Both the position numbers and the translations under genes were made by a program. A DNA stretch of 5,833 nt from the IMG/VR virus record IMGVR_UViG_3300027933_000048, positions 1 through 5,833 of that record; one strand, 5' to 3'. Positions 1 through 5,833 of this stretch are shown piece after piece (position 1 is the first letter of the stretch; each line of letters begins with the position of its first letter). Under the pieces are notes generated by a model. The model saw nothing but the letters and a program-made list of their open reading frames with translations. It was not told the DNA's origin and made no database searches.

Positions 1-11
1 TTTAATTAGTT

Positions 12-19
12 GGTGAGGT
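12..19 (+). promoter_or_regulatory. Shine-Dalgarno site for the glycosyltransferase
   Basis: GGTGAGGT ends 4 nt before TTG at 24. Confidence 0.7.
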
Positions 20-23
20 TAAA

Positions 24-1097
24 TTGGAAAAGCCAATTTATTACGTTTATCCTCAGCACCATGATGTTAGTTTCAAATTTGTGGCTAAGGAACATGTAAA
101 AATGTTAAAAGAAAAATATACAGTTTACGAAATACCCGCTTTATCATTTTACCAATTTACTCCTTTCAAATATCCAATTTCAATTATCCACCCATTTTTT
201 TATTCAATGTGGCATTGGACAAATGTTGAATTTTCATTCTTTGAACAATATAGAACTAAAGTTAGTGAAATAATTGGAGTTGAAGTGGCAGACAGTAATA
301 AAATTGCGGAGAAATATATTGAATATGGCAATAATTATGCAGATAAAATAATAGTAAATTCAGAATGGTCAAAAAATGCGTTTAAAAATTCTGGTCTGAA
401 AGTTCCAATTTATAAAGTTGTCCATAATTTTAATGATAGACTATTAGCAAAAGATGAGGAATTAAATGTTGATGAACAAGTGAAATATATTGAAAAAGTC
501 AAAAATGAGAAGAAAATTAAATTAATTTTCATTTCACTTTGGCACTCTGATTTTAGGAAAGGAGGCGATATTTTTCATGCAATTGCTAAGGAAATACAAA
601 AAGAAAGAGACGACATTTATTTTTTAGTTAAAAGCGGAATGCAAAGAACTGATTTCAAAGATATTAAAATGTTTAACTTAACTGGAAATACTGATTTTGA
701 CAATATAATAAAAATGTATAGAATATCCGATTTGTATTTATTACCTTCAAGAGGTGGAAGTTTTGAATTAAACGGTCTTGAGGCTTTTATATCAAAAATT
801 CCAGTAATTGCAACTAAAAACGGGGCATGGGAAGAATATTTTCCTAACGCTTTGAAAGATTTACTAGTTAATAGTTGTGATTTTCCAACAGTTTTACCAG
901 GAAATCCAATTCATATAGGCAAAGGTGTGCAAATGTGTACAAATGAGGCAATAGATAAAATATTAGAAGTTATAGATAAATTAGATGAATATAAGGCAAA
1001 AATTGAGGAGAATTATAATTTCTGGTTAAAAAATTTCGGCTATAATGCAGTTAAAAAACAATTGCTTAATGCTGTAACGCATGAAATGCTGAACTAA
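24..1097 (+). CDS. GT-B fold (GT4-like) glycosyltransferase, rudivirus ORF356-like, 357 aa
   Basis: TTG start at 24 preceded by SD-like GGTGAGGT (12-19). GT4 motifs: ADKIIVNSEW, RKGGD, DLYLLPSRGGSFELNGLEAF..KIPVIAT. Size and sequence style match the rudiviral glycosyltransferase as I recall it. Confidence 0.9.
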   Translation: MEKPIYYVYPQHHDVSFKFVAKEHVKMLKEKYTVYEIPALSFYQFTPFKYPISIIHPFFYSMWHWTNVEFSFFEQYRTKVSEIIGVEVADSNKIAEKYIEYGNNYADKIIVNSEWSKNAFKNSGLKVPIYKVVHNFNDRLLAKDEELNVDEQVKYIEKVKNEKKIKLIFISLWHSDFRKGGDIFHAIAKEIQKERDDIYFLVKSGMQRTDFKDIKMFNLTGNTDFDNIIKMYRISDLYLLPSRGGSFELNGLEAFISKIPVIATKNGAWEEYFPNALKDLLVNSCDFPTVLPGNPIHIGKGVQMCTNEAIDKILEVIDKLDEYKAKIEENYNFWLKNFGYNAVKKQLLNAVTHEMLN

Positions 1098-1112
1098 GTG
1101 CCAAACACATTA

Positions 1113-1134
1113 GAAAAATCTTAAATTAGTCATA
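1113..1134 (+). promoter_or_regulatory. BRE-TATA-GTC promoter, probably giving a leaderless permease+TGT mRNA
   Basis: GAAAAAT-CTTAAATT(1120-1127)-AGTCATA. The TATA ends 23 nt before ATG 1151. GTC just downstream of TATA is a known rudivirus promoter feature. Confidence 0.7.
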
Positions 1135-1150
1135 AAACTCAGACTGTAAT

Positions 1151-2344
1151 ATGGAATTTAAAAGAAAAAGTTCAGGCATAATAAAAAGTTTTAGCTCATT
1201 AGATATTTTTTCTATAAACCTGCTTTACATGGGAATTTTAAGCGGTATAAGTTACCCGCTTTTTGTTTCAGGTCTGTTAAAATCTGTAAATCTATTATTC
1301 GCAGTTTTAATAGCATCAGCTTTTGAAATTCCGCTTTTAGTAATATATTATATTTTAACTAAAAAAATACCGTTAAATGGCGGAGATTATGCTTATATTC
1401 GCTCAGCATTTTCGCCTAAGTTTTATACCGTTTTTGGAATTTCGTTATGGCTGATTTATGTATTTTCAGCACCAGTTTTATCAAACCTTGTATTGTTAAA
1501 TTTCAATATTCCAATATTCGATAAGTTTTTAATTTCAGAACTATTATTTGGAACTGCGTTACTTAGTGTTAGCAAAAAAACAATTTATGCTTATATTGTT
1601 GACGCTATTGCAATTTTACAAATAATTATTTCACTAGTCTTACCAATTTCAAGTTTCCATTTTCAAATTCAAAATTTTACAATATCGAATAGTTTACTTT
1701 CAGCTTTATTATTTGATTTATCCATGTTTTTGTTTTTAAACGCAATTAGTTACATTGCGGGGGAGATAAAAAACATAAGCAAAAACGCTAAAATCGGATA
1801 TTTTGCAAGTTATTTAGTAGTTACTGTATTAGCAATATTAGACAGTTATTCAAATTTAAATATATTGTTTCTACTATTTCCAATTTGGTATATGAGTTAT
1901 ATTTTTGTCACCTCAATGATACAAAGTCGTTTAGTACAAAATTTAGCAATTGATAGAATTTTACCTGAAAAATTTGCGAAAATAACCCCTAACGCACTTT
2001 TATTAATCTTTGTTGCTGATACAATTGCAAATGTTTTAGAAAATATATTTAATTTTTCAATTTCATTCGGTCTTGACGGTCTATTATTTATTTTCTGGAA
2101 CTTTATAATTGTTAGCCTAGCATTCCTAAAATTAACAAATAAGAAACTAATATTTTCAGTAGCAATATCCAGCTTAATTTTACAAATCTTCCTATTCTTC
2201 TATTTAGGATTACAAAATAACATATTCTATAACTTTGTGATTGAGGGAAATGTAATATATACAATATTAAGGATATTAATAATGCCATTTGTAGGCACAA
2301 TTATCTATCTGTTACGGAGAAAAACTGTAAATGTTGATCATTAA
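1151..2344 (+). CDS. APC-superfamily amino-acid/amine permease-like membrane protein (rudivirus ORF399-like), 397 aa
   Basis: Many hydrophobic segments. APC-type motifs FKRKSSGIIKSFSSLD, IPLNGGDYAYIRSAF, IAGEIKN, SRLVQNLAIDRILP. Confidence 0.85.
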   Translation: MEFKRKSSGIIKSFSSLDIFSINLLYMGILSGISYPLFVSGLLKSVNLLFAVLIASAFEIPLLVIYYILTKKIPLNGGDYAYIRSAFSPKFYTVFGISLWLIYVFSAPVLSNLVLLNFNIPIFDKFLISELLFGTALLSVSKKTIYAYIVDAIAILQIIISLVLPISSFHFQIQNFTISNSLLSALLFDLSMFLFLNAISYIAGEIKNISKNAKIGYFASYLVVTVLAILDSYSNLNILFLLFPIWYMSYIFVTSMIQSRLVQNLAIDRILPEKFAKITPNALLLIFVADTIANVLENIFNFSISFGLDGLLFIFWNFIIVSLAFLKLTNKKLIFSVAISSLILQIFLFFYLGLQNNIFYNFVIEGNVIYTILRILIMPFVGTIIYLLRRKTVNVDH

Positions 2345-3234
2345 TGAAATTAATATTTGGAGTTAATGTTTCAACTAGTTATCTTTTTAAAACCAATTTT
2401 CCAGTTTTAATAAATCAATTGAGATTTAGAAAAAGAAAATGGAGAAATGAAACTTGGATAGATAGCGGTGGCTTTCAAATTATTATGTATAATTTAAAAA
2501 TTTCGCCACACGACATTTTAGCAAAATATAAAAGCTTTAACGCTTATGCCTTCTTTTCACTAGATATACCAAGTATTTTTTCACCGCTTAACAAAAAAAA
2601 TTATGAATATTTTGAGTATTTATATACCAAAATTGAATGGATTGAAAAAATTATACCTGTAATTCACATTTATCCAATTCAAGAATTAGATGAAGCAATT
2701 GATTTTTATAAACAATATAGCTATTATTTTGCAATTGGAGGCTTAATCCCGTCAAGCAAAAAGAAAATTCTAATTTATGCATTTCCGTGGGTATATTATT
2801 TAAGAAGAAGAGTTCCCTATCTGCACGTTTTAGGCATGTCAGGCCCATACTTTTTACAAACTTTTAGTAATGTTGATAGCATTGATACCGGAACTTATAG
2901 CAAAACAGCCGCATTTAGGGAAATATTTTGGTTTAATGGAACTGTAAAATATGTAGGCAAAAGAAGACCAAAAAACATAACCAGAGAAGAAAAAGAAGAA
3001 CTGTTTGAATTTTTGGATAAATGTAATTTCCCATTTGAATATGATTTAAGTAATTTCAAAATTCTGGAGCTTATAAATGCATATATGTTACTGTATAACA
3101 ATTGGAAAATTAAGAATAAGTATACAGAATATGCCAAAAAATTAAGAGGAATGGGAATAGATAGTTTAACAATGGAGTTAATTAAAAACTATAAAATTGC
3201 GGCTGAAATATTATCACAAAAAAGAGAAAAATAG
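2344..3234 (+). CDS. tRNA-guanine transglycosylase-like (TGT/DpdA family) protein, 296 aa
   Basis: Catalytic DSGGFQ motif, plus SLDIP, IPVIH, AIGGL, LHVLG and DSID motifs in TGT order. Start overlaps the permease stop (TAATG, 2342-2346). Confidence 0.88.
   Translation: MKLIFGVNVSTSYLFKTNFPVLINQLRFRKRKWRNETWIDSGGFQIIMYNLKISPHDILAKYKSFNAYAFFSLDIPSIFSPLNKKNYEYFEYLYTKIEWIEKIIPVIHIYPIQELDEAIDFYKQYSYYFAIGGLIPSSKKKILIYAFPWVYYLRRRVPYLHVLGMSGPYFLQTFSNVDSIDTGTYSKTAAFREIFWFNGTVKYVGKRRPKNITREEKEELFEFLDKCNFPFEYDLSNFKILELINAYMLLYNNWKIKNKYTEYAKKLRGMGIDSLTMELIKNYKIAAEILSQKREK
3203..3232. repeat. Cassette-boundary repeat, copy 1 (inside the TGT 3' end)
   Basis: CTGAAATATTATCACAAAAAAGAGAAAAAT, 29/30 identical to 3551-3580. 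Confidence 0.85.
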
Positions 3235-3256
3235 GCGATAAAAAAGGAAATTAGAT

Positions 3257-3487
3257 TTATAAACTCTTATAAATTTCTGATAAAACAAAACAATAAAATT
3301 CTATCTTAGACCTTATATCTATTACATCTATATTATCAATATGAAGTTCATTTAATAGTTTCTCTGTTTCTCTCAATTTAATCAATAATTCAAATATATT
3401 ATCAATAGCCTTTTGTAAATCATTACCTAAATATATTTTGCCGTGACCATAAACTAAATAATATCCATTCTCATCTTTCTCTAACAT
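3257..3487 (-). CDS. Small hypothetical protein, 76 aa
   Basis: ORF with its own TATA-GTC promoter, short GTGA-containing leader and a downstream T-rich tract on the - strand. Confidence 0.75.
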   Translation of the reverse strand: MLEKDENGYYLVYGHGKIYLGNDLQKAIDNIFELLIKLRETEKLLNELHIDNIDVIDIRSKIEFYCFVLSEIYKSL

Positions 3488-3512
3488 AGTTTTTCACAAC
3501 TTCAAATTATCG

Positions 3513-3530
3513 TATGACAAATTTAAGAAT
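3513..3530 (-). promoter_or_regulatory. TATA-GTC promoter of the 76-aa gene
   Basis: The - strand reads ATT-CTTAAATT-TGTCATA, nearly identical to the CTTAAATT-AGTCATA promoter at 1120. Confidence 0.65.
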
Positions 3531-3550
3531 AAGAGATAAAAAACTCATGA

Positions 3551-3595
3551 CTGGAATATTATCACAAAAAAGAGAAAAATTATAGATAAAAAAAA
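3551..3595. repeat. Cassette-boundary repeat, copy 2 (contains - strand TTTTTCT terminator-like tract)
   Basis: CTGGAATATTATCACAAAAAAGAGAAAAATTATAGATAAAAAAAA, immediately after the stop of the 70-aa gene. Confidence 0.85.
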
Positions 3596-3598
3596 TTA

Positions 3599-3811
3599 TT
3601 AAGCCTGAGACCGAGAAGAAAGAGATGAAAATAACTTGTTAGCATATTCGCTATCATAGCCATGGTAATAAAAAATTTTGTCGTTATTGCTAAGGACAAA
3701 AACCCCCCATCTAGGGGGATTGCAGCATGTGCATTTTGCTAAAACTACATTATTTTTAATTTGAATTTGTTGAAAGTTATGGTATTGCACACCTAGGGTT
3801 TGAACCTTCAT
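3599..3811 (-). CDS. Small hypothetical protein, 70 aa (MKVQTLG..., CTCC motif), candidate anti-defense gene
   Basis: The track start 3826 lies upstream of the TSS predicted from the TATA (about 3818). ATG 3811 follows the leader GAGGGAT. Confidence 0.75.
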   Translation of the reverse strand: MKVQTLGVQYHNFQQIQIKNNVVLAKCTCCNPPRWGVFVLSNNDKIFYYHGYDSEYANKLFSSLSSRSQA

Positions 3812-3828
3812 ATCCCTCAATTGCATAT

Positions 3829-3877
3829 ATGTAAACAGTTATATTTAAAGCTTTCTCTAAGTTTTTACCTTTGTAGT
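3829..3877 (-). promoter_or_regulatory. Strong early-type promoter (upstream element-BRE-TTTAAATA-N10-CAT)
   Basis: ACTACAAAGGTAAAAACTTAGAGAAAGC-TTTAAATA(3849-3842)-N10-CAT. Aligns without gaps to three other promoters in the window. Confidence 0.8.
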
Positions 3878-3900
3878 TTACGTTATTAATGGCCCTAGTT

Positions 3901-3930
3901 AAGTAATATTATTACAAACTTGAGAAAAAT
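3901..3930. repeat. Cassette-boundary repeat, copy 3
   Basis: AAGTAATATTATTACAAACTTGAGAAAAAT aligns without gaps to copies 1 and 2. Confidence 0.7.
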
Positions 3931-4010
3931 AGACAATAAAAATAGATGAAAATAGAAAACTAAAACATAAAATTATAAAAAGAAAAATAAAAGATAAAAA
4001 AAGAATAAAA
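3931..4010 (-). terminator. T-rich terminator region after the HTH gene
   Basis: Multiple oligo-T runs on the - strand directly after the stop at 4011. Confidence 0.55.
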
Positions 4011-4178
4011 TTACCAACAATCTTCCATGTATTTCTTGGCTTTTCTTTCAGATATCCCTAAAAATTGGGATATCTCGCTCACTGAGTAGCCCTCTCGGGC
4101 CAACTCGTGAGCTATTGAAATCATATCGTCTTCTGATTCAACCATGTATCTTACACCTCTTACACTTATGCTTTTCAT
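4011..4178 (-). CDS. 55-aa helix-turn-helix DNA-binding protein, SIRV gp1/ORF56a-like (Aca8-like)
   Basis: MKSISVRGVRYMVESEDDMISIAHELAREGYSVSEISQFLGISERKAKKYMEDCW has a classic HTH (GYSVSEISQFLGISERKAKKY). ATG 4178 follows GGGGATAAGAAG. The track's longer N-terminus runs through the promoter. Confidence 0.85.
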   Translation of the reverse strand: MKSISVRGVRYMVESEDDMISIAHELAREGYSVSEISQFLGISERKAKKYMEDCW

Positions 4179-4200
4179 CTTCTTATCCCCAATATACCAT

Positions 4201-4249
4201 ATGCACAAACACATATATAAAGTTTTCTGTGCCTTTTTACCTTTATAGC
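4201..4249 (-). promoter_or_regulatory. Strong early-type promoter of the HTH gene
   Basis: GCTATAAAGGTAAAAAGGCACAGAAAAC-TTTATATA(4221-4214)-N10-CAT. Confidence 0.8.
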
Positions 4250-4277
4250 CCACATCATGCTTTCAATAAAAATGCAT

Positions 4278-4439
4278 TTAGTCCCCATATTTCTTTTTTA
4301 ACATTCTAATTAATTCTTCTTCTTCAATTCGTTTCATTTCCTGTCTTAATTCCAATAAGAAAAAGACAAATAATAATTCGTAAAAGAGTGCAAGAATAAC
4401 TATAAACCATATTGGACTTAATGGTGCATTTAAATCCAT
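4278..4439 (-). CDS. 53-aa single-pass membrane protein (not in the ORF track)
   Basis: Manual translation: MDLNAPLSPIWFIVILALFYELLFVFFLLELRQEMKRIEEEELIRMLKKKYGD. SD-like GGTGTGA at 4450-4444. Starts 15 nt after the stop of the 170-aa gene. Confidence 0.75.
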   Translation of the reverse strand: MDLNAPLSPIWFIVILALFYELLFVFFLLELRQEMKRIEEEELIRMLKKKYGD

Positions 4440-4454
4440 ATTTTCACACCATAT

Positions 4455-4967
4455 CTATTCTTTGCAATTAAGAATTTCCTCTAGTTTATCAGTAAATCTA
4501 ACTTCTATTTCATCAGAACTCAACAATTGATAAACCCTAACGCTAAGCAATTTAGCAACAACATCATTAAAATCGTTAATAATACATTCCTTAAAATAAT
4601 AAGAATCATTGAGCACATTATTTAAATATATTTCTGCAATTTTCTTTTTCTCGTTTTCAGATAAATTAAATTCAACAGTAATTTCCTTAAATTCATAATC
4701 CATTTGATTTGCTTCTCTATTTAACGAAACTGTAATTTTGGAATTTTCCATAAATGAGATAAGCAATTCTTCTTTTTCATCTTCATCAAAATATTGTAAA
4801 TTCCATCCATCTTTTTCCACAATTTCAGAAATCATTTGAATTATAGTATCTATTACAACATCCCTAAAATTAGTATAACAGTTTTGAATAGCATTATCAA
4901 AATCTAATGATGTAATAATATTTTCATTGAATTTTTCTTCATCCAGCTTATCTAAAACGACTGACAT
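4455..4967 (-). CDS. Acidic hypothetical protein, 170 aa
   Basis: Long ORF with its own TATA-GTC promoter. Hand count gives 38 D/E versus 17 K/R. Confidence 0.85.
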   Translation of the reverse strand: MSVVLDKLDEEKFNENIITSLDFDNAIQNCYTNFRDVVIDTIIQMISEIVEKDGWNLQYFDEDEKEELLISFMENSKITVSLNREANQMDYEFKEITVEFNLSENEKKKIAEIYLNNVLNDSYYFKECIINDFNDVVAKLLSVRVYQLLSSDEIEVRFTDKLEEILNCKE

Positions 4968-4991
4968 ATATCATCATTTTCATTCTTCAAT

Positions 4992-5014
4992 TATGACATA
5001 TTTATGTTTCTCTC
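4992..5014 (-). promoter_or_regulatory. BRE-TATA-GTC promoter of the 170-aa/53-aa operon
   Basis: The - strand reads GAGAGAAA-CATAAATA-TGTCATA. Predicted TSS near 4975. Confidence 0.7.
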
Positions 5015-5028
5015 AGTAAATCTTAGAC

Positions 5029-5070
5029 CTGAATTTTTATTACAAAACTGAGAAAAATTGTAGATAAAAA
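5029..5070. repeat. Cassette-boundary repeat, copy 4
   Basis: CTGAATTTTTATTACAAAACTGAGAAAAATTGTAGATAAAAA. 5048-5067 is identical to 5540-5559 (20 bp). Confidence 0.8.
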
Positions 5071-5139
5071 TAAGTGACATAAAATTAAGAACACAAAAAT
5101 TAAAAAGATAAAAAAATTAACTTAATGGAAATAAAAAAA
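5071..5139 (-). terminator. T-rich terminator region after the 98-aa gene
   Basis: Oligo-T runs on the - strand immediately after the stop at 5140. Confidence 0.55.
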
Positions 5140-5436
5140 TTATTGAATGAAGTGCGTTCGTTCGTAAGAATCCTTAATCCTAAAAAGCATGTCATTGACA
5201 ACACTAGTCAGATTGGCCCACACTGACTTCATTTCCTCACATTGAACTCCATCAACTTCATATTCTACCCGTAGATAATACACACTGCCGCCCCATCCGT
5301 CAGGGCCTAAGAGCAGTTTGGCAGAAACAATTTTAACTTCAGTAGGAAAGTTGTGAATTTTTTGGCTGTATTTTATTACATCTTGCGTTAAATCCTTAAT
5401 GACCTGATATATTTTTTCTTCCTCTTGTTTACTCAC
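5140..5436 (-). CDS. Hypothetical protein, probably 98 aa from GTG 5436 (MSKQEEEK...), candidate anti-defense gene
   Basis: The track ATG 5472 overlaps the TATA box and ATG 5454 precedes the predicted TSS (about 5449). In-frame GTG 5436 follows a perfect SD GAGGTGA (5448-5442). Confidence 0.8.
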   Translation of the reverse strand: MSKQEEEKIYQVIKDLTQDVIKYSQKIHNFPTEVKIVSAKLLLGPDGWGGSVYYLRVEYEVDGVQCEEMKSVWANLTSVVNDMLFRIKDSYERTHFIQ

Positions 5437-5458
5437 CTTCTTCACCTCTAACATACAT

Positions 5459-5507
5459 ATGCATCTCCTCATATATAAAGTTTTCTCTACCTTTGTATTT
5501 TTGCATG
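5459..5507 (-). promoter_or_regulatory. Strong early-type promoter of the 98-aa gene
   Basis: CATGCAAAAATACAAAGGTAGAGAAAAC-TTTATATA(5479-5472)-N10-CAT. Confidence 0.8.
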
Positions 5508-5520
5508 TTTATTGTTGTCA

Positions 5521-5559
5521 TAGTATTATTATATCAACTCTGAGAAAAATTGTAGATAA
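5521..5559. repeat. Cassette-boundary repeat, copy 5
   Basis: TAGTATTATTATATCAACTCTGAGAAAAATTGTAGATAA, sharing an exact 20-mer with copy 4. Confidence 0.75.
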
Positions 5560-5628
5560 TCTTAACTACAATTAGAAATAAAATTAGAATTAAATGGCTT
5601 GGAAGTTTTTCATCACATGGTTCAGCTT
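5543..5628 (-). ncRNA. Candidate small non-coding transcript (about 50-85 nt), or an emptied cassette
   Basis: Lies between an intact promoter and T-rich terminators. Only ATG-TGA and a 7-codon ORF are present. Contains CTGA-ACCAT-GTGATGA. Confidence 0.4.
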
Positions 5629-5638
5629 AAAGATACTA

Positions 5639-5687
5639 ATGTAACTTATGGTATTTAAAGTTTTCTGCATCCTTGTATTTTTCTATC
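5639..5687 (-). promoter_or_regulatory. Strong early-type promoter with no downstream protein gene
   Basis: GATAGAAAAATACAAGGATGCAGAAAAC-TTTAAATA(5659-5652)-N10-CAT, same architecture as the promoters at 3842, 4214 and 5472. Confidence 0.75.
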
Positions 5688-5833
5688 TTAGCACCTTTTT
5701 TATCATCTTATCATTTTATCCTTTAACTGGAAAATATATTTCAAATCGTTTCTTTCCTTTTTCTCCTGCTATATGAAATGCGGAGAAATATATCTGCAAC
5801 AACTACCCTGCAAATTGCAACTATTAACTACTA

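What the first reader, a model, noticed from the sequence alone, without database searches (positions are those of the whole stretch)
1113..3234. Permease + TGT/DpdA-like operon: possible viral import-and-insert 7-deazaguanine modification system
Seen: one promoter drives an APC permease and a DSGGFQ transglycosylase, coupled by TAATG, with no que/folE biosynthesis genes in the window. Known: TGT/DpdA enzymes swap guanine for 7-deazaguanines (preQ0/preQ1), viral DpdA proteins modify DNA against restriction, and archaea make preQ0 for archaeosine. Inference: the permease supplies a base or amine precursor and the enzyme modifies viral DNA or host tRNA. As I recall, both genes are annotated in SIRV1/2, but I know of no functional link shown between them.
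Basis: partly seen in the sequence, partly recalled or inferred. Interest (0 to 1): 0.72.

Follow-up and report, generated by a model that had tools for sequence, protein, structure and literature searches.

The report
Rudivirus permease plus DpdA gene pair
This is the known permease and DNA-guanine-swapping enzyme (DpdA) gene pair of Sulfolobus rod-shaped viruses; the enzyme call holds up, but nothing here shows that the permease feeds it.

Summary
The window is a 5.8-kb contig of an SIRV-type rudivirus. A 397-aa permease ORF and a 296-aa ORF carrying DSGGFQ overlap at TAATG, sit behind a conserved TATA-like box, and have no que/folE genes nearby.

The second protein belongs to the TGT superfamily by fold and by profile. 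Its base-exchange aspartates are intact, but it lacks the zinc site and any tRNA-binding domains. Its SIRV and SRV orthologues were already listed as DpdA by Hutinet et al. 2019. The STSV2 homologue (36% identical) belongs to a virus whose DNA carries dCDG (Cui et al. 2023).

The first protein is a compact 12-helix APC-family transporter. It has chromosomal crenarchaeal homologues that are not linked to any deazapurine genes.

The pair is adjacent in every SIRV-type contig with downstream DNA. It is convergent in SRV, in reversed order in two uncultured contigs, and split in SBRV1. About 60% of all SIRV2 neighbour pairs stay adjacent across the same genomes, so this linkage is not above background. 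SSRV1 and ARV2 have the permease alone; STSV1 and STSV2 have DpdA alone. S. islandicus makes preQ0 itself. SIRV2 lost both genes in culture without loss of infectivity.

Verdict: a known gene pair, with the import-and-insert link untested.

The parts
24..1097 (+). Glycosyltransferase gene (context; homologue of SIRV2 ORF356). It marks the end of the conserved core block.
   Evidence: Pfam Glyco_trans_1_4 at 3.6e-9 and PHROG 2170 at 4e-106. 76-84% aa identity to SIRV glycosyltransferases.
1112..1127 (+). Predicted promoter: a purine-rich stretch followed by the TATA-like box TTAAATT (1121-1127), centred 27 nt before the permease ATG. This implies a leaderless transcript.
   Evidence: Sequence. 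The box is conserved as TTAAATT or TTTATTT in 11 aligned viruses while the flanks vary. No transcript mapping was available.
1151..2344 (+). APC-family secondary transporter (397 aa, 12 helices, very short loops); orthologue of SIRV2 gp14/ORF399.
   Evidence: PHROG 8289 at 1e-191. Pfam AA_permease_2 at 22.5 bits, below the cut-off of 27. Family profile versus PDB: GkApcT 1.7e-6, AdiC 4e-4. AF2 model pLDDT 83. Foldseek top hits are AdiC, CAT4, GkApcT and ApcT, with TM-scores 0.65-0.71.
2342..2346 (+). TAATG stop/start overlap between the two genes.
   Evidence: In relatives the junction is an overlap, or a gap of 2-5 nt (US-type) to 8 or 20 nt (SIRV1-3, by start call).
2344..3234 (+). Minimal, zinc-less TGT-superfamily enzyme of the viral DpdA kind (296 aa); orthologue of SIRV2 gp13/ORF310.
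   Evidence: PHROG 887 at 3e-64. AF2 pLDDT 84. Foldseek PDB top hits: ArcTGT 1j2b/1iq8 at 5e-7, QTRT1, bacterial TGT, DpdA 7ui4. BFVD hits are phage DpdA proteins. A profile of relatives hits 1iq8 at 5e-37 and 7ui4 at 2e-17.
2461..2478 (+). DSGGFQ motif. D40 aligns with the Asp of the VDSGSFQ motif of P. horikoshii ArcTGT.
   Evidence: D40, S41 and G42 are invariant in 55 of 55 family members. Alignment to 1iq8.
2563..2565 (+). D74 (LDIP), aligned with the base-binding Asp of ArcTGT (FLDIP).
   Evidence: Invariant in 55 of 55.
2884..2886 (+). D181 (SIDTG), aligned with the nucleophile Asp of ArcTGT (DLFDS).
   Evidence: Invariant in 55 of 55.
3180..3245 (.). First copy of a repeated element that reads as a T-rich terminator on the minus strand. 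It overlaps the last ~18 codons of DpdA and coincides with the end of nucleotide similarity to SIRV4-11.
   Evidence: Repeat families D1, D2 and D4. The megablast match ends at 3245.

Best explanation
This is a two-gene accessory cassette of SIRV-type rudiviruses, probably transcribed from one TATA box as a leaderless bicistronic mRNA.

Gene 2 is a stripped-down TGT-superfamily enzyme of the viral DpdA kind. It most likely exchanges a small fraction of guanines in viral DNA for a 7-deazaguanine that the host already makes (preQ0 or a close precursor such as CDG). The result would be an anti-defence DNA mark that is dispensable in permissive laboratory hosts.

Gene 1 is a compact but complete 12-helix APC-family transporter related to chromosomal crenarchaeal permeases. 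It most likely imports an amino acid or amine during infection, as a separate host-derived metabolic gene. It travels with DpdA because the two were inherited as a block, not because it feeds the enzyme.

Shown: gene structure, fold, conserved catalytic residues, distribution, purifying selection, and dispensability (from the literature).
Inferred: DNA as the target, which base is inserted, co-transcription, the transporter's substrate, and the absence of a metabolic link.
For: Enzyme. TGT fold. D40, D74 and D181 are invariant and the GG(L/V)xP loop is conserved. There are no PUA or other tRNA-binding domains and the protein is only 296 aa. The 36%-identical STSV2 homologue belongs to a virus whose DNA contains dCDG and whose host is reported not to put 7-deazaguanines in tRNA. 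SIRV and SRV orthologues are listed as DpdA-only viruses.

Host supply. S. islandicus FolE, QueD, QueE, Gat-QueC and ArcTGT are listed in Hutinet's supplement.

Accessory status. SIRV2 lost gp10-gp14 spontaneously and kept wild-type infectivity. In SIRV2 the pair lies next to acrID1. In US-type viruses it lies after the glycosyltransferase, where SIRV2 carries Acr genes.

Permease independence. APC amino-acid/polyamine-type fold and profile hits. ~487-aa homologues on long contigs up to 637 kb, so evidently chromosomal, share many conserved residues. The two loci annotated sit among glycosidase or acyl-CoA genes and none has a DpdA within 6 kb. SSRV1 and ARV2 have the permease only, and STSV2 has DpdA only. 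Adjacency equals background synteny: 13 of 22, 10 of 16 and 9 of 15 neighbour pairs are kept, against 2 of 3 for this pair.
Against: All five DpdA-bearing rudivirus lineages also carry the permease. They are adjacent in four of the five, in three different arrangements: tandem, convergent, and reversed tandem with a stop/start overlap. The pair moved as a unit between the left arm (SIRV1-3) and the right arm (US-type). Both genes were lost together in culture. The two trees agree for shared taxa. No modified base has been reported for any rudivirus in the papers I could search. The transporter's substrate is unknown.
Confidence: 0.45

Rival explanations
1. Import-and-insert system. The permease brings in a 7-deazaguanine base, or a direct precursor or amine, which DpdA then inserts into viral DNA. 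The two genes would form one functional module.
For: Co-occurrence in every DpdA-bearing rudivirus lineage, and adjacency kept through an inversion, an order swap and a relocation. Stop/start overlap in both gene orders. Joint loss in culture. Cui 2023 states that the source of the 7-deazaguanine in STSV2 is unknown, and Hutinet 2019 raises uptake as an option for DpdA-only phages. The nearest solved structures are transporters of cationic amino acids and amines. From my own knowledge, not tested here: preQ1 and the archaeosine base are cationic.
Against: The host makes preQ0. STSV2, the one relative with a proven DNA modification, has no such permease anywhere in its genome. SSRV1 and ARV2 keep the permease without DpdA. 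The cellular homologues have no DpdA within 6 kb, and the two neighbourhoods annotated hold no que genes. Adjacency is not above background. One gain at the base of the SIRV/SRV/SBRV1 group would explain the co-occurrence. The known deazapurine importers named in the papers read or recalled here (YhhQ; QueT/QrtT; SLC35F2) are, from my own knowledge, not APC proteins.
Confidence: 0.2
2. The enzyme acts on host tRNA, not on DNA. It would replace guanine in host tRNAs to tune or disable translation, and the permease would be unrelated.
For: The best structural and profile matches are to archaeosine tRNA-guanine transglycosylase. Database annotation says queuine tRNA-ribosyltransferase.
Against: The protein lacks the C-terminal tRNA-binding domains and the zinc subdomain of ArcTGT. 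Viral structural neighbours are phage DpdA proteins. The STSV2 relative is associated with modified DNA in a host without 7-deazaguanine in tRNA. The host already has its own ArcTGT.
Confidence: 0.1
3. The permease supports the modification indirectly, or has a non-nutritional role. It might export released guanine or a toxic by-product, import an amine donor for a further step on the inserted base, or act as a membrane factor such as a superinfection block.
For: The same linkage evidence as for the import model. In bicaudaviruses and in cellular relatives the partner of this DpdA clade is a DUF5591/ArcS-like protein, which acts on the inserted base. The partner slot may therefore be for base tailoring.
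Against: There is no direct evidence. The transporter keeps the canonical APC architecture.
Confidence: 0.12

Closest known systems
Viral DpdA of DpdA-only viruses (Hutinet et al. 2019, PMC6884629), including SIRV1/2/4-11 and SRV proteins
   Same: It is an orthologue of the listed proteins (67-75% identity to SIRV proteins). It has a TGT fold and intact catalytic aspartates, and the virus has no preQ0 genes.
   Different: It is a new sequence variant from a metagenome contig. No rudiviral DpdA has been assayed, and no rudiviral DNA modification was found in the papers I could search.
STSV2 DpdA (STSV2_15) with ArcS2 (Cui et al. 2023, PMC10516641)
   Same: 36% identity over 90% of the length. 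It groups with the cellular TGT-like proteins next to the rudiviral clade. It is the only relative from a virus with a measured DNA modification (dCDG at 0.04% of G).
   Different: Its partner gene is a DUF5591/ArcS-like protein, not a permease. STSV2 has no permease homologue.
Archaeosine tRNA-guanine transglycosylase (ArcTGT, PDB 1iq8/1j2b)
   Same: Best structural and profile match. DSG, LD.P, GG.VP and D.xDS motifs align.
   Different: The window protein has no zinc ligands and no C-terminal tRNA-binding domains. It is half the length (296 versus ~580 aa).
Bacterial DpdA of the Dpd restriction-modification system (PDB 7ui4; NCBIfam NF041059)
   Same: Same superfamily, with DNA as the substrate. 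The profile hit is 2e-17.
   Different: The window protein scores 13 bits against a 200-bit cut-off. It has no DpdB/DpdC partners, and 7ui4 keeps the CxCxxC...H zinc motif.
APC-family transporters AdiC, ApcT and GkApcT (TC 2.A.3)
   Same: LeuT-type 12-helix fold with broken helices 1 and 6. The P..GGDY.Y and GE motifs are present.
   Different: It is about 50-60 residues shorter, with minimal loops. The helix-1 G-S/T-G motif is degenerate. It scores below the Pfam cut-off, and its substrate is unknown.
Phage-encoded YhhQ preQ0 transporter homologues (mentioned in Hutinet 2019)
   Same: A precedent for a virus carrying a transporter alongside 7-deazaguanine genes.
   Different: YhhQ was not compared with the permease here; from my own knowledge it belongs to a different family. 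Hutinet reports no correlation of YhhQ with any phage group.

Membership tests
TGT superfamily (PF01702) | TIM-barrel TGT fold | tested here: met
   AF2 pLDDT 84. The top 39 Foldseek PDB hits are all TGT, ArcTGT, QTRT1 or DpdA, with E down to 5e-7.
TGT superfamily (PF01702) | Catalytic and base-binding aspartates (the DSG, LD.P and D.xD motifs) | tested here: met
   D40, D74 and D181 are invariant in 55 of 55 members and align to the ArcTGT motifs.
TGT superfamily (PF01702) | Score above the Pfam gathering threshold | tested here: not met
   The window protein has no Pfam hit at E<0.1. 35 of 55 more distant relatives do hit PF01702, so membership rests on transitive profile and fold evidence.
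TGT superfamily (PF01702) | Structural zinc site CxCxxC...H | tested here: not met
   The aligned columns hold C/H/T/N, F, and I in the rudiviral clade. Only about a third of the wider family keeps Cys/Cys/His.
Archaeosine tRNA-guanine transglycosylase (ArcTGT) | C-terminal tRNA-binding domains including PUA | tested here: not met
   The protein is 296 aa with no further Pfam domains. The model ends in a helical tail.
Bacterial DpdA equivalog (NF041059) | Score above the NCBIfam cut-off | tested here: not met
   13.4 bits against a cut-off of 200.
Viral DpdA (DNA-guanine transglycosylase) | Orthology to proteins catalogued as viral DpdA | tested here: met
   67-75% identity to the SIRV proteins listed by accession in Hutinet's Supplementary Data. 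BFVD neighbours are phage DpdA proteins.
Viral DpdA (DNA-guanine transglycosylase) | Inserts a 7-deazaguanine into DNA | not testable with these tools
   There is only indirect support: dCDG in the DNA of STSV2, which encodes a 36%-identical homologue.
APC family transporter (TC 2.A.3; PF13520) | 12-helix LeuT-type fold with discontinuous helices 1 and 6 | tested here: met
   AF2 pLDDT 83, with helix breaks at 27/29 and 193/199. Foldseek hits to AdiC, ApcT, GkApcT and CAT4 at TM 0.65-0.71.
APC family transporter (TC 2.A.3; PF13520) | Score above the Pfam gathering threshold | tested here: not met
   The window protein scores 22.5 bits against 27. Cellular homologues score 30.7 and 31.7 bits. 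The family profile hits GkApcT at 1.7e-6.
APC family transporter (TC 2.A.3; PF13520) | Amino acid, polyamine or organocation substrate | not testable with these tools
   The substrate cannot be read from the sequence, and the helix-1 motif is degenerate.
7-deazaguanine import-and-insert module | Transporter from a known deazapurine importer family (YhhQ, QueT/QrtT) | tested here: not met
   All profile and fold hits are to APC amino-acid-type transporters.
7-deazaguanine import-and-insert module | Linkage of the two genes beyond shared ancestry | tested here: inconclusive
   The genes are adjacent in 4 of 5 lineages in three arrangements. Background adjacency retention is ~60%. Each gene also occurs alone.

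The most novel reading that the evidence does not exclude
The rudiviral APC-type permease is a dedicated importer of a 7-deazapurine base (preQ0, CDG, preQ1 or the archaeosine base). This would make the cassette a self-contained viral import-and-insert DNA hypermodification module. It would also define a new deazapurine transporter family, whose cellular homologues could then be salvage transporters in Crenarchaeota.
Probability: 0.12. Interest if true: 0.7.

Novelty: new member of a known kind. Interest (0 to 1): 0.33.

Why it matters
If the permease did feed DpdA, that could bear on a question Cui et al. 2023 left open: where Sulfolobus viruses get their 7-deazaguanine (though STSV2 itself lacks this permease). 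It would also add a transporter family to deazapurine biology. As the evidence stands, the window adds only one more variant of a catalogued DpdA-only virus. The useful outputs are practical. First, the SIRV2 deletion mutant lacking gp10-gp14 already exists and makes the chemistry directly testable. Second, the rudiviral DpdA clade is a zinc-less minimal form. Its sister proteins pair with DUF5591/ArcS-like genes instead of a permease.

Tried and rejected
- Single-sequence searches of the DpdA-like protein found nothing useful: Pfam gave no hit, PDB gave only a chance hit, and NCBIfam DpdA scored 13 bits. A profile of close relatives against PDB also failed. Only the wider profile and the fold search worked.
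- The word-index homologue search for the permease saturated at 8000 hydrophobic candidates and returned only SIRV-like proteins.
- The genome-contig scan for cellular permease homologues returned only two actinobacterial contigs that look like SIRV contamination. Cellular homologues came from the metagenome scan instead.
- I tested whether the 207-aa ORF that follows the permease in SSRV1 and ARV2 is a cryptic TGT. It is not (hhalign probability 4%; no Pfam family).
- I tested whether ARV1, SMRV1, ARV3 and MRV1 hide divergent copies of either gene. They do not (HMM with filters off). Likewise there is no DpdA in SSRV1 and no permease in STSV2.
- I considered DpdA4 as the family. Rejected: DpdA4 is the haloviral DUF6610 group.
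- I considered adjacency as evidence of function. A synteny control downgraded it.
- Literature searches for SIRV2 plus transglycosylase, rudivirus plus permease, and SIRV plus deazaguanine returned nothing relevant.
- Vestergaard 2008, Quax 2013, Kessler 2004 and Baquero 2020 (journal version) are not held. I therefore could not check transcript maps.
- The sigma-70 promoter scanner was not used, because it does not apply to archaeal promoters.
Full report
WHAT IS THERE.

The window has about 27% G+C. Three co-directional ORFs sit on the plus strand: a glycosyltransferase (24-1097), a 397-aa membrane protein (1151-2344) and a 296-aa protein (2344-3234). After them comes a run of small minus-strand ORFs. 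The stop of the second ORF and the start of the third share one base, giving TAATG at 2342-2346. DSGGFQ is residues 40-45 of the third ORF.

The window is the whole of IMG/VR contig UViG_3300027933_000048. Positions 1-3245 are about 80% identical in DNA to Sulfolobus islandicus rod-shaped viruses 4-11. In those records the same three genes are annotated glycosyltransferase, aminoacid permease and queuine tRNA-ribosyltransferase.

THE ENZYME.

On its own the 296-aa protein hits no Pfam family and no PDB sequence. It scores 13 bits against the NCBIfam DpdA model, whose cut-off is 200. It does match PHROG 887 at 3e-64.

I ran an exhaustive HMM search with an alignment of 13 relatives. It found 231 cluster representatives at E<0.001. 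Of 55 sampled members, 35 hit PF01702. A profile of those 55 hits archaeosine TGT 1iq8 at 5e-37 and the DNA preQ0 insertase DpdA 7ui4 at 2e-17.

The AlphaFold model (pLDDT 84) retrieves only TGT-family structures at the top of the PDB search. In the viral library it retrieves the SBRV1 orthologue and then phage DpdA proteins.

D40, S41, G42, D74, G164, D181 and N245 are invariant across the 55 sequences. They align with the catalytic and base-binding motifs of ArcTGT. The GG(L/V)xP loop has no Glu after it. From my own knowledge, that resembles the preQ0-type pocket of ArcTGT rather than the preQ1-type pocket of bacterial TGT.

The zinc ligands are absent in the rudiviral clade, and there are no tRNA-binding domains. 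The protein is therefore a minimal, probably active, base-exchange enzyme.

WHAT IS ALREADY KNOWN.

Hutinet et al. 2019 list the proteins of SIRV1, 2, 4, 5, 7, 10 and 11, further SIRVs, and SRV as DpdA, in the group of viruses that encode DpdA but no biosynthesis genes. They note that such viruses could rely on host preQ0 or on uptake. They also tabulate a complete archaeosine pathway for S. islandicus: FolE, QueD, QueE, Gat-QueC and ArcTGT.

Cui et al. 2023 measured dCDG at 0.04% of G in STSV2 DNA. STSV2 encodes a 36%-identical homologue plus an ArcS-like protein. They report that its host lacks the pathway and that the source of the base is unknown. Their DpdA4 is a different, haloviral family.

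Mayo-Munoz et al. 2018 found that SIRV2 lost gp10-gp14 spontaneously, including the permease gene gp14 and the DpdA gene gp13. The mutant propagates like wild type in a CRISPR-null host.

I found no paper that links the permease to the enzyme.

THE PERMEASE.

It matches PHROG 8289 at 1e-191. It matches Pfam AA_permease_2 only below threshold. A profile of nine viral homologues hits the cationic amino acid transporter homologue GkApcT at 1.7e-6 and AdiC at 4e-4.

The AlphaFold model (pLDDT 83) has twelve helices with very short loops and breaks in helices 1 and 6. Its best structural matches are AdiC, CAT4, GkApcT, ApcT and LAT-type transporters.

A metagenome scan found homologues of about 487 aa on long cellular contigs, one of them 637 kb. 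The two scanned against Pfam pass the threshold. None has a DpdA within 6 kb. The two whose neighbours were annotated lie among glycosidase, PaREP1, thiolase, LigB, amidohydrolase and acyl-CoA genes, with no que genes nearby.

Many residues, including those in helices 1 and 6, are conserved between the viral and cellular proteins. That suggests a shared substrate class.

IS THE PAIR LINKED BEYOND CHANCE?

Distribution of the two genes:
- Every SIRV-type locus with DNA downstream of the permease has DpdA immediately after it. About 25 such loci come from IMG/VR and about 55 from metagenomes, and the two sets overlap.
- In SRV the two genes are adjacent but convergent.
- In SBRV1 they are 4.7 kb apart.
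- In two uncultured rudivirus-like contigs the order is dUTPase, then DpdA, then a 483-aa permease homologue with overlapping stop and start.
- SSRV1 and ARV2 have the permease followed by an unrelated 207-aa ORF, and no DpdA. This was confirmed across the whole genome for SSRV1 by HMM. ARV2 rests on tblastn at E<1e-3.
- ARV1, SMRV1, ARV3 and MRV1 have neither gene.
- STSV2 has DpdA plus DUF5591 and no permease.

Trees. The DpdA tree shows a monophyletic rudiviral clade. The permease tree agrees for the shared taxa, but places SSRV1 and ARV2 with the cellular proteins.

Selection. Both genes evolve under purifying selection.

Synteny control. Of all neighbouring SIRV2 gene pairs with homologues in the target genome, 13 of 22 stay adjacent in SIRV9, 10 of 16 in SRV and 9 of 15 in SBRV1. 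The permease-DpdA pair stays adjacent in two of these three genomes. Adjacency alone is therefore not above background.

By glycosyltransferase identity, the viruses with both genes are also the closest relatives of one another. One ancestral gain can therefore explain the co-occurrence.

What remains in favour of a link: the pair moved as a unit from the left arm (SIRV1-3) to the right arm (US-type), the order swap kept the genes adjacent, and no rudivirus has DpdA alone.

EXPRESSION SIGNALS.

A TTAAATT or TTTATTT box centred about 27 nt upstream of the permease ATG is conserved in eleven viruses. At the junction the permease stop overlaps the DpdA ATG or lies a few nt before it: 2-5 nt in US-type viruses and 8 or 20 nt in SIRV1-3, depending on the start call. 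That leaves no room for a separate intergenic promoter. A-rich TATA-like strings inside the permease 3' end cannot be excluded as internal promoters. Co-transcription is therefore inferred, not shown.

READING.

I put about 0.7 on the enzyme being a DNA-guanine transglycosylase that inserts a host-made 7-deazaguanine. I put about 0.45 on the full best explanation, in which the permease is a separate host-derived nutrient importer. A direct import-and-insert link gets about 0.2, of which 0.12 is for a deazapurine substrate as such. Action on tRNA gets about 0.1. Indirect or non-nutritional permease roles get about 0.12.

The pair lies next to anti-CRISPR genes in SIRV2. In US-type viruses it occupies the slot where SIRV2 has Acr genes. 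That fits an anti-defence accessory role.

NOVELTY AND LIMITS.

The genes and the DpdA assignment are known, and the window adds a variant. The permease association is real, and I did not find it discussed in the papers I could search. However, the evidence here does not lift it above inheritance as a block.

I could not read the older SIRV transcript-mapping papers. I could not determine the transporter's substrate.

Noticed in passing
window 3180-5700: The right half of the window is a series of small minus-strand gene cassettes, each bounded by two repeated elements. The first element is 38-66 nt, with copies at 3180/3207-3245, 3528/3555-3593, 3905-3942, 3963-4000, 5006/5033-5071 and 5525-5559. 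Most copies lie just downstream of a minus-strand stop codon, and on that strand they read as T-runs, so they are probably terminators. The second element is 34-70 nt and TATA-containing, with copies at 3842-3875, 4214-4247, 5472-5505 and 5652-5685, at or just upstream of minus-strand ORF starts; the 4214-4247 copy lies inside the listed 4011-4253 ORF, whose true start may be the internal Met. The first terminator-like copy overprints the last ~18 codons of DpdA. It also marks where similarity to SIRV4-11 stops (3245), so it is a likely recombination boundary.
   Followed up: partly
window 3240-5833: This region matches near-terminal variable regions of other SIRVs at 72-74% identity. The match is at the left end and inverted in SIRV8/9/10, and at the right end in SIRV4/11. 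The permease-DpdA pair therefore sits at the border between the core and the variable terminus.
   Followed up: partly
L034 (Streptomyces gamaensis NZ_JBHSPB010000050.1) and L035 (Planomonospora alba NZ_BAAAUT010000071.1, 31,951 bp): The only hits to the rudiviral permease in the genome collection, searched with a single peptide pattern, are contigs in two actinobacterial assemblies, at 68% identity (SIRV1-3-like). One contig is about the size of a rudivirus genome. This is almost certainly SIRV DNA contaminating bacterial assemblies. It would also explain the NCBI name 'MULTISPECIES ... [Bacteria]' for cluster P0071.
   Followed up: no
L003 (STSV2), L041, L124-L126, L038: Outside rudiviruses, the closest relatives of this DpdA clade sit next to a DUF5591 (ArcS core-like) gene, in either order and often with overlapping or abutting ends. 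Several are on cellular contigs of ~190-210 kb, beside a 1428-aa protein. TGT-like plus DUF5591 looks like a conserved two-gene module in archaea and their viruses. Rudiviruses have the permease in that partner position.
   Followed up: partly
L005:5475-6095 (SSRV1), L006:6264-6884 (ARV2): In the two rudiviruses that have the permease but no DpdA, the permease is followed 9 nt downstream by a 207-aa protein of unknown function (PHROG 17844). It has no significant Pfam family and no similarity to TGT.
   Followed up: partly
L038:6994-7695; SBRV1 gp23 (L130:622-1434): A PP-loop protein resembling PAPS reductase and QueC directly follows a cellular TGT-like relative. SBRV1 has a gene annotated as PAPS reductase about 2 kb from its DpdA. 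This may be a further recurrent partner of the clade.
   Followed up: no
SIRV2 record NC_004086 (L127) 5562-8581 and 28451-31524: In SIRV2 the pair lies two genes away from acrID1 (gp10). In US-type viruses and in this window it lies after the ORF356-type glycosyltransferase, the slot where SIRV2 carries AcrID1-family genes and gp47/gp48 (Acr names from the record and from the abstract listed). Both positions are anti-defence neighbourhoods.
   Followed up: no
Literature versus SRV record (L129 7486-9607): Mayo-Munoz et al. 2018 describe gp13-gp14 as absent from ARV and SRV. SRV in fact has both genes: ORF419 (permease) and ORF294 (putative tRNA-guanine transglycosylase).
   Followed up: yes
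window 4011-4253 (-): This 80-aa helix-turn-helix protein matches PHROG 7067, which is labelled 'terminase small subunit'. The same label appears on SIRV2 ORF83a/b in RefSeq. From my own knowledge, rudiviruses are not known to use a terminase, so the label is probably an annotation artefact for a small DNA-binding protein.
   Followed up: no
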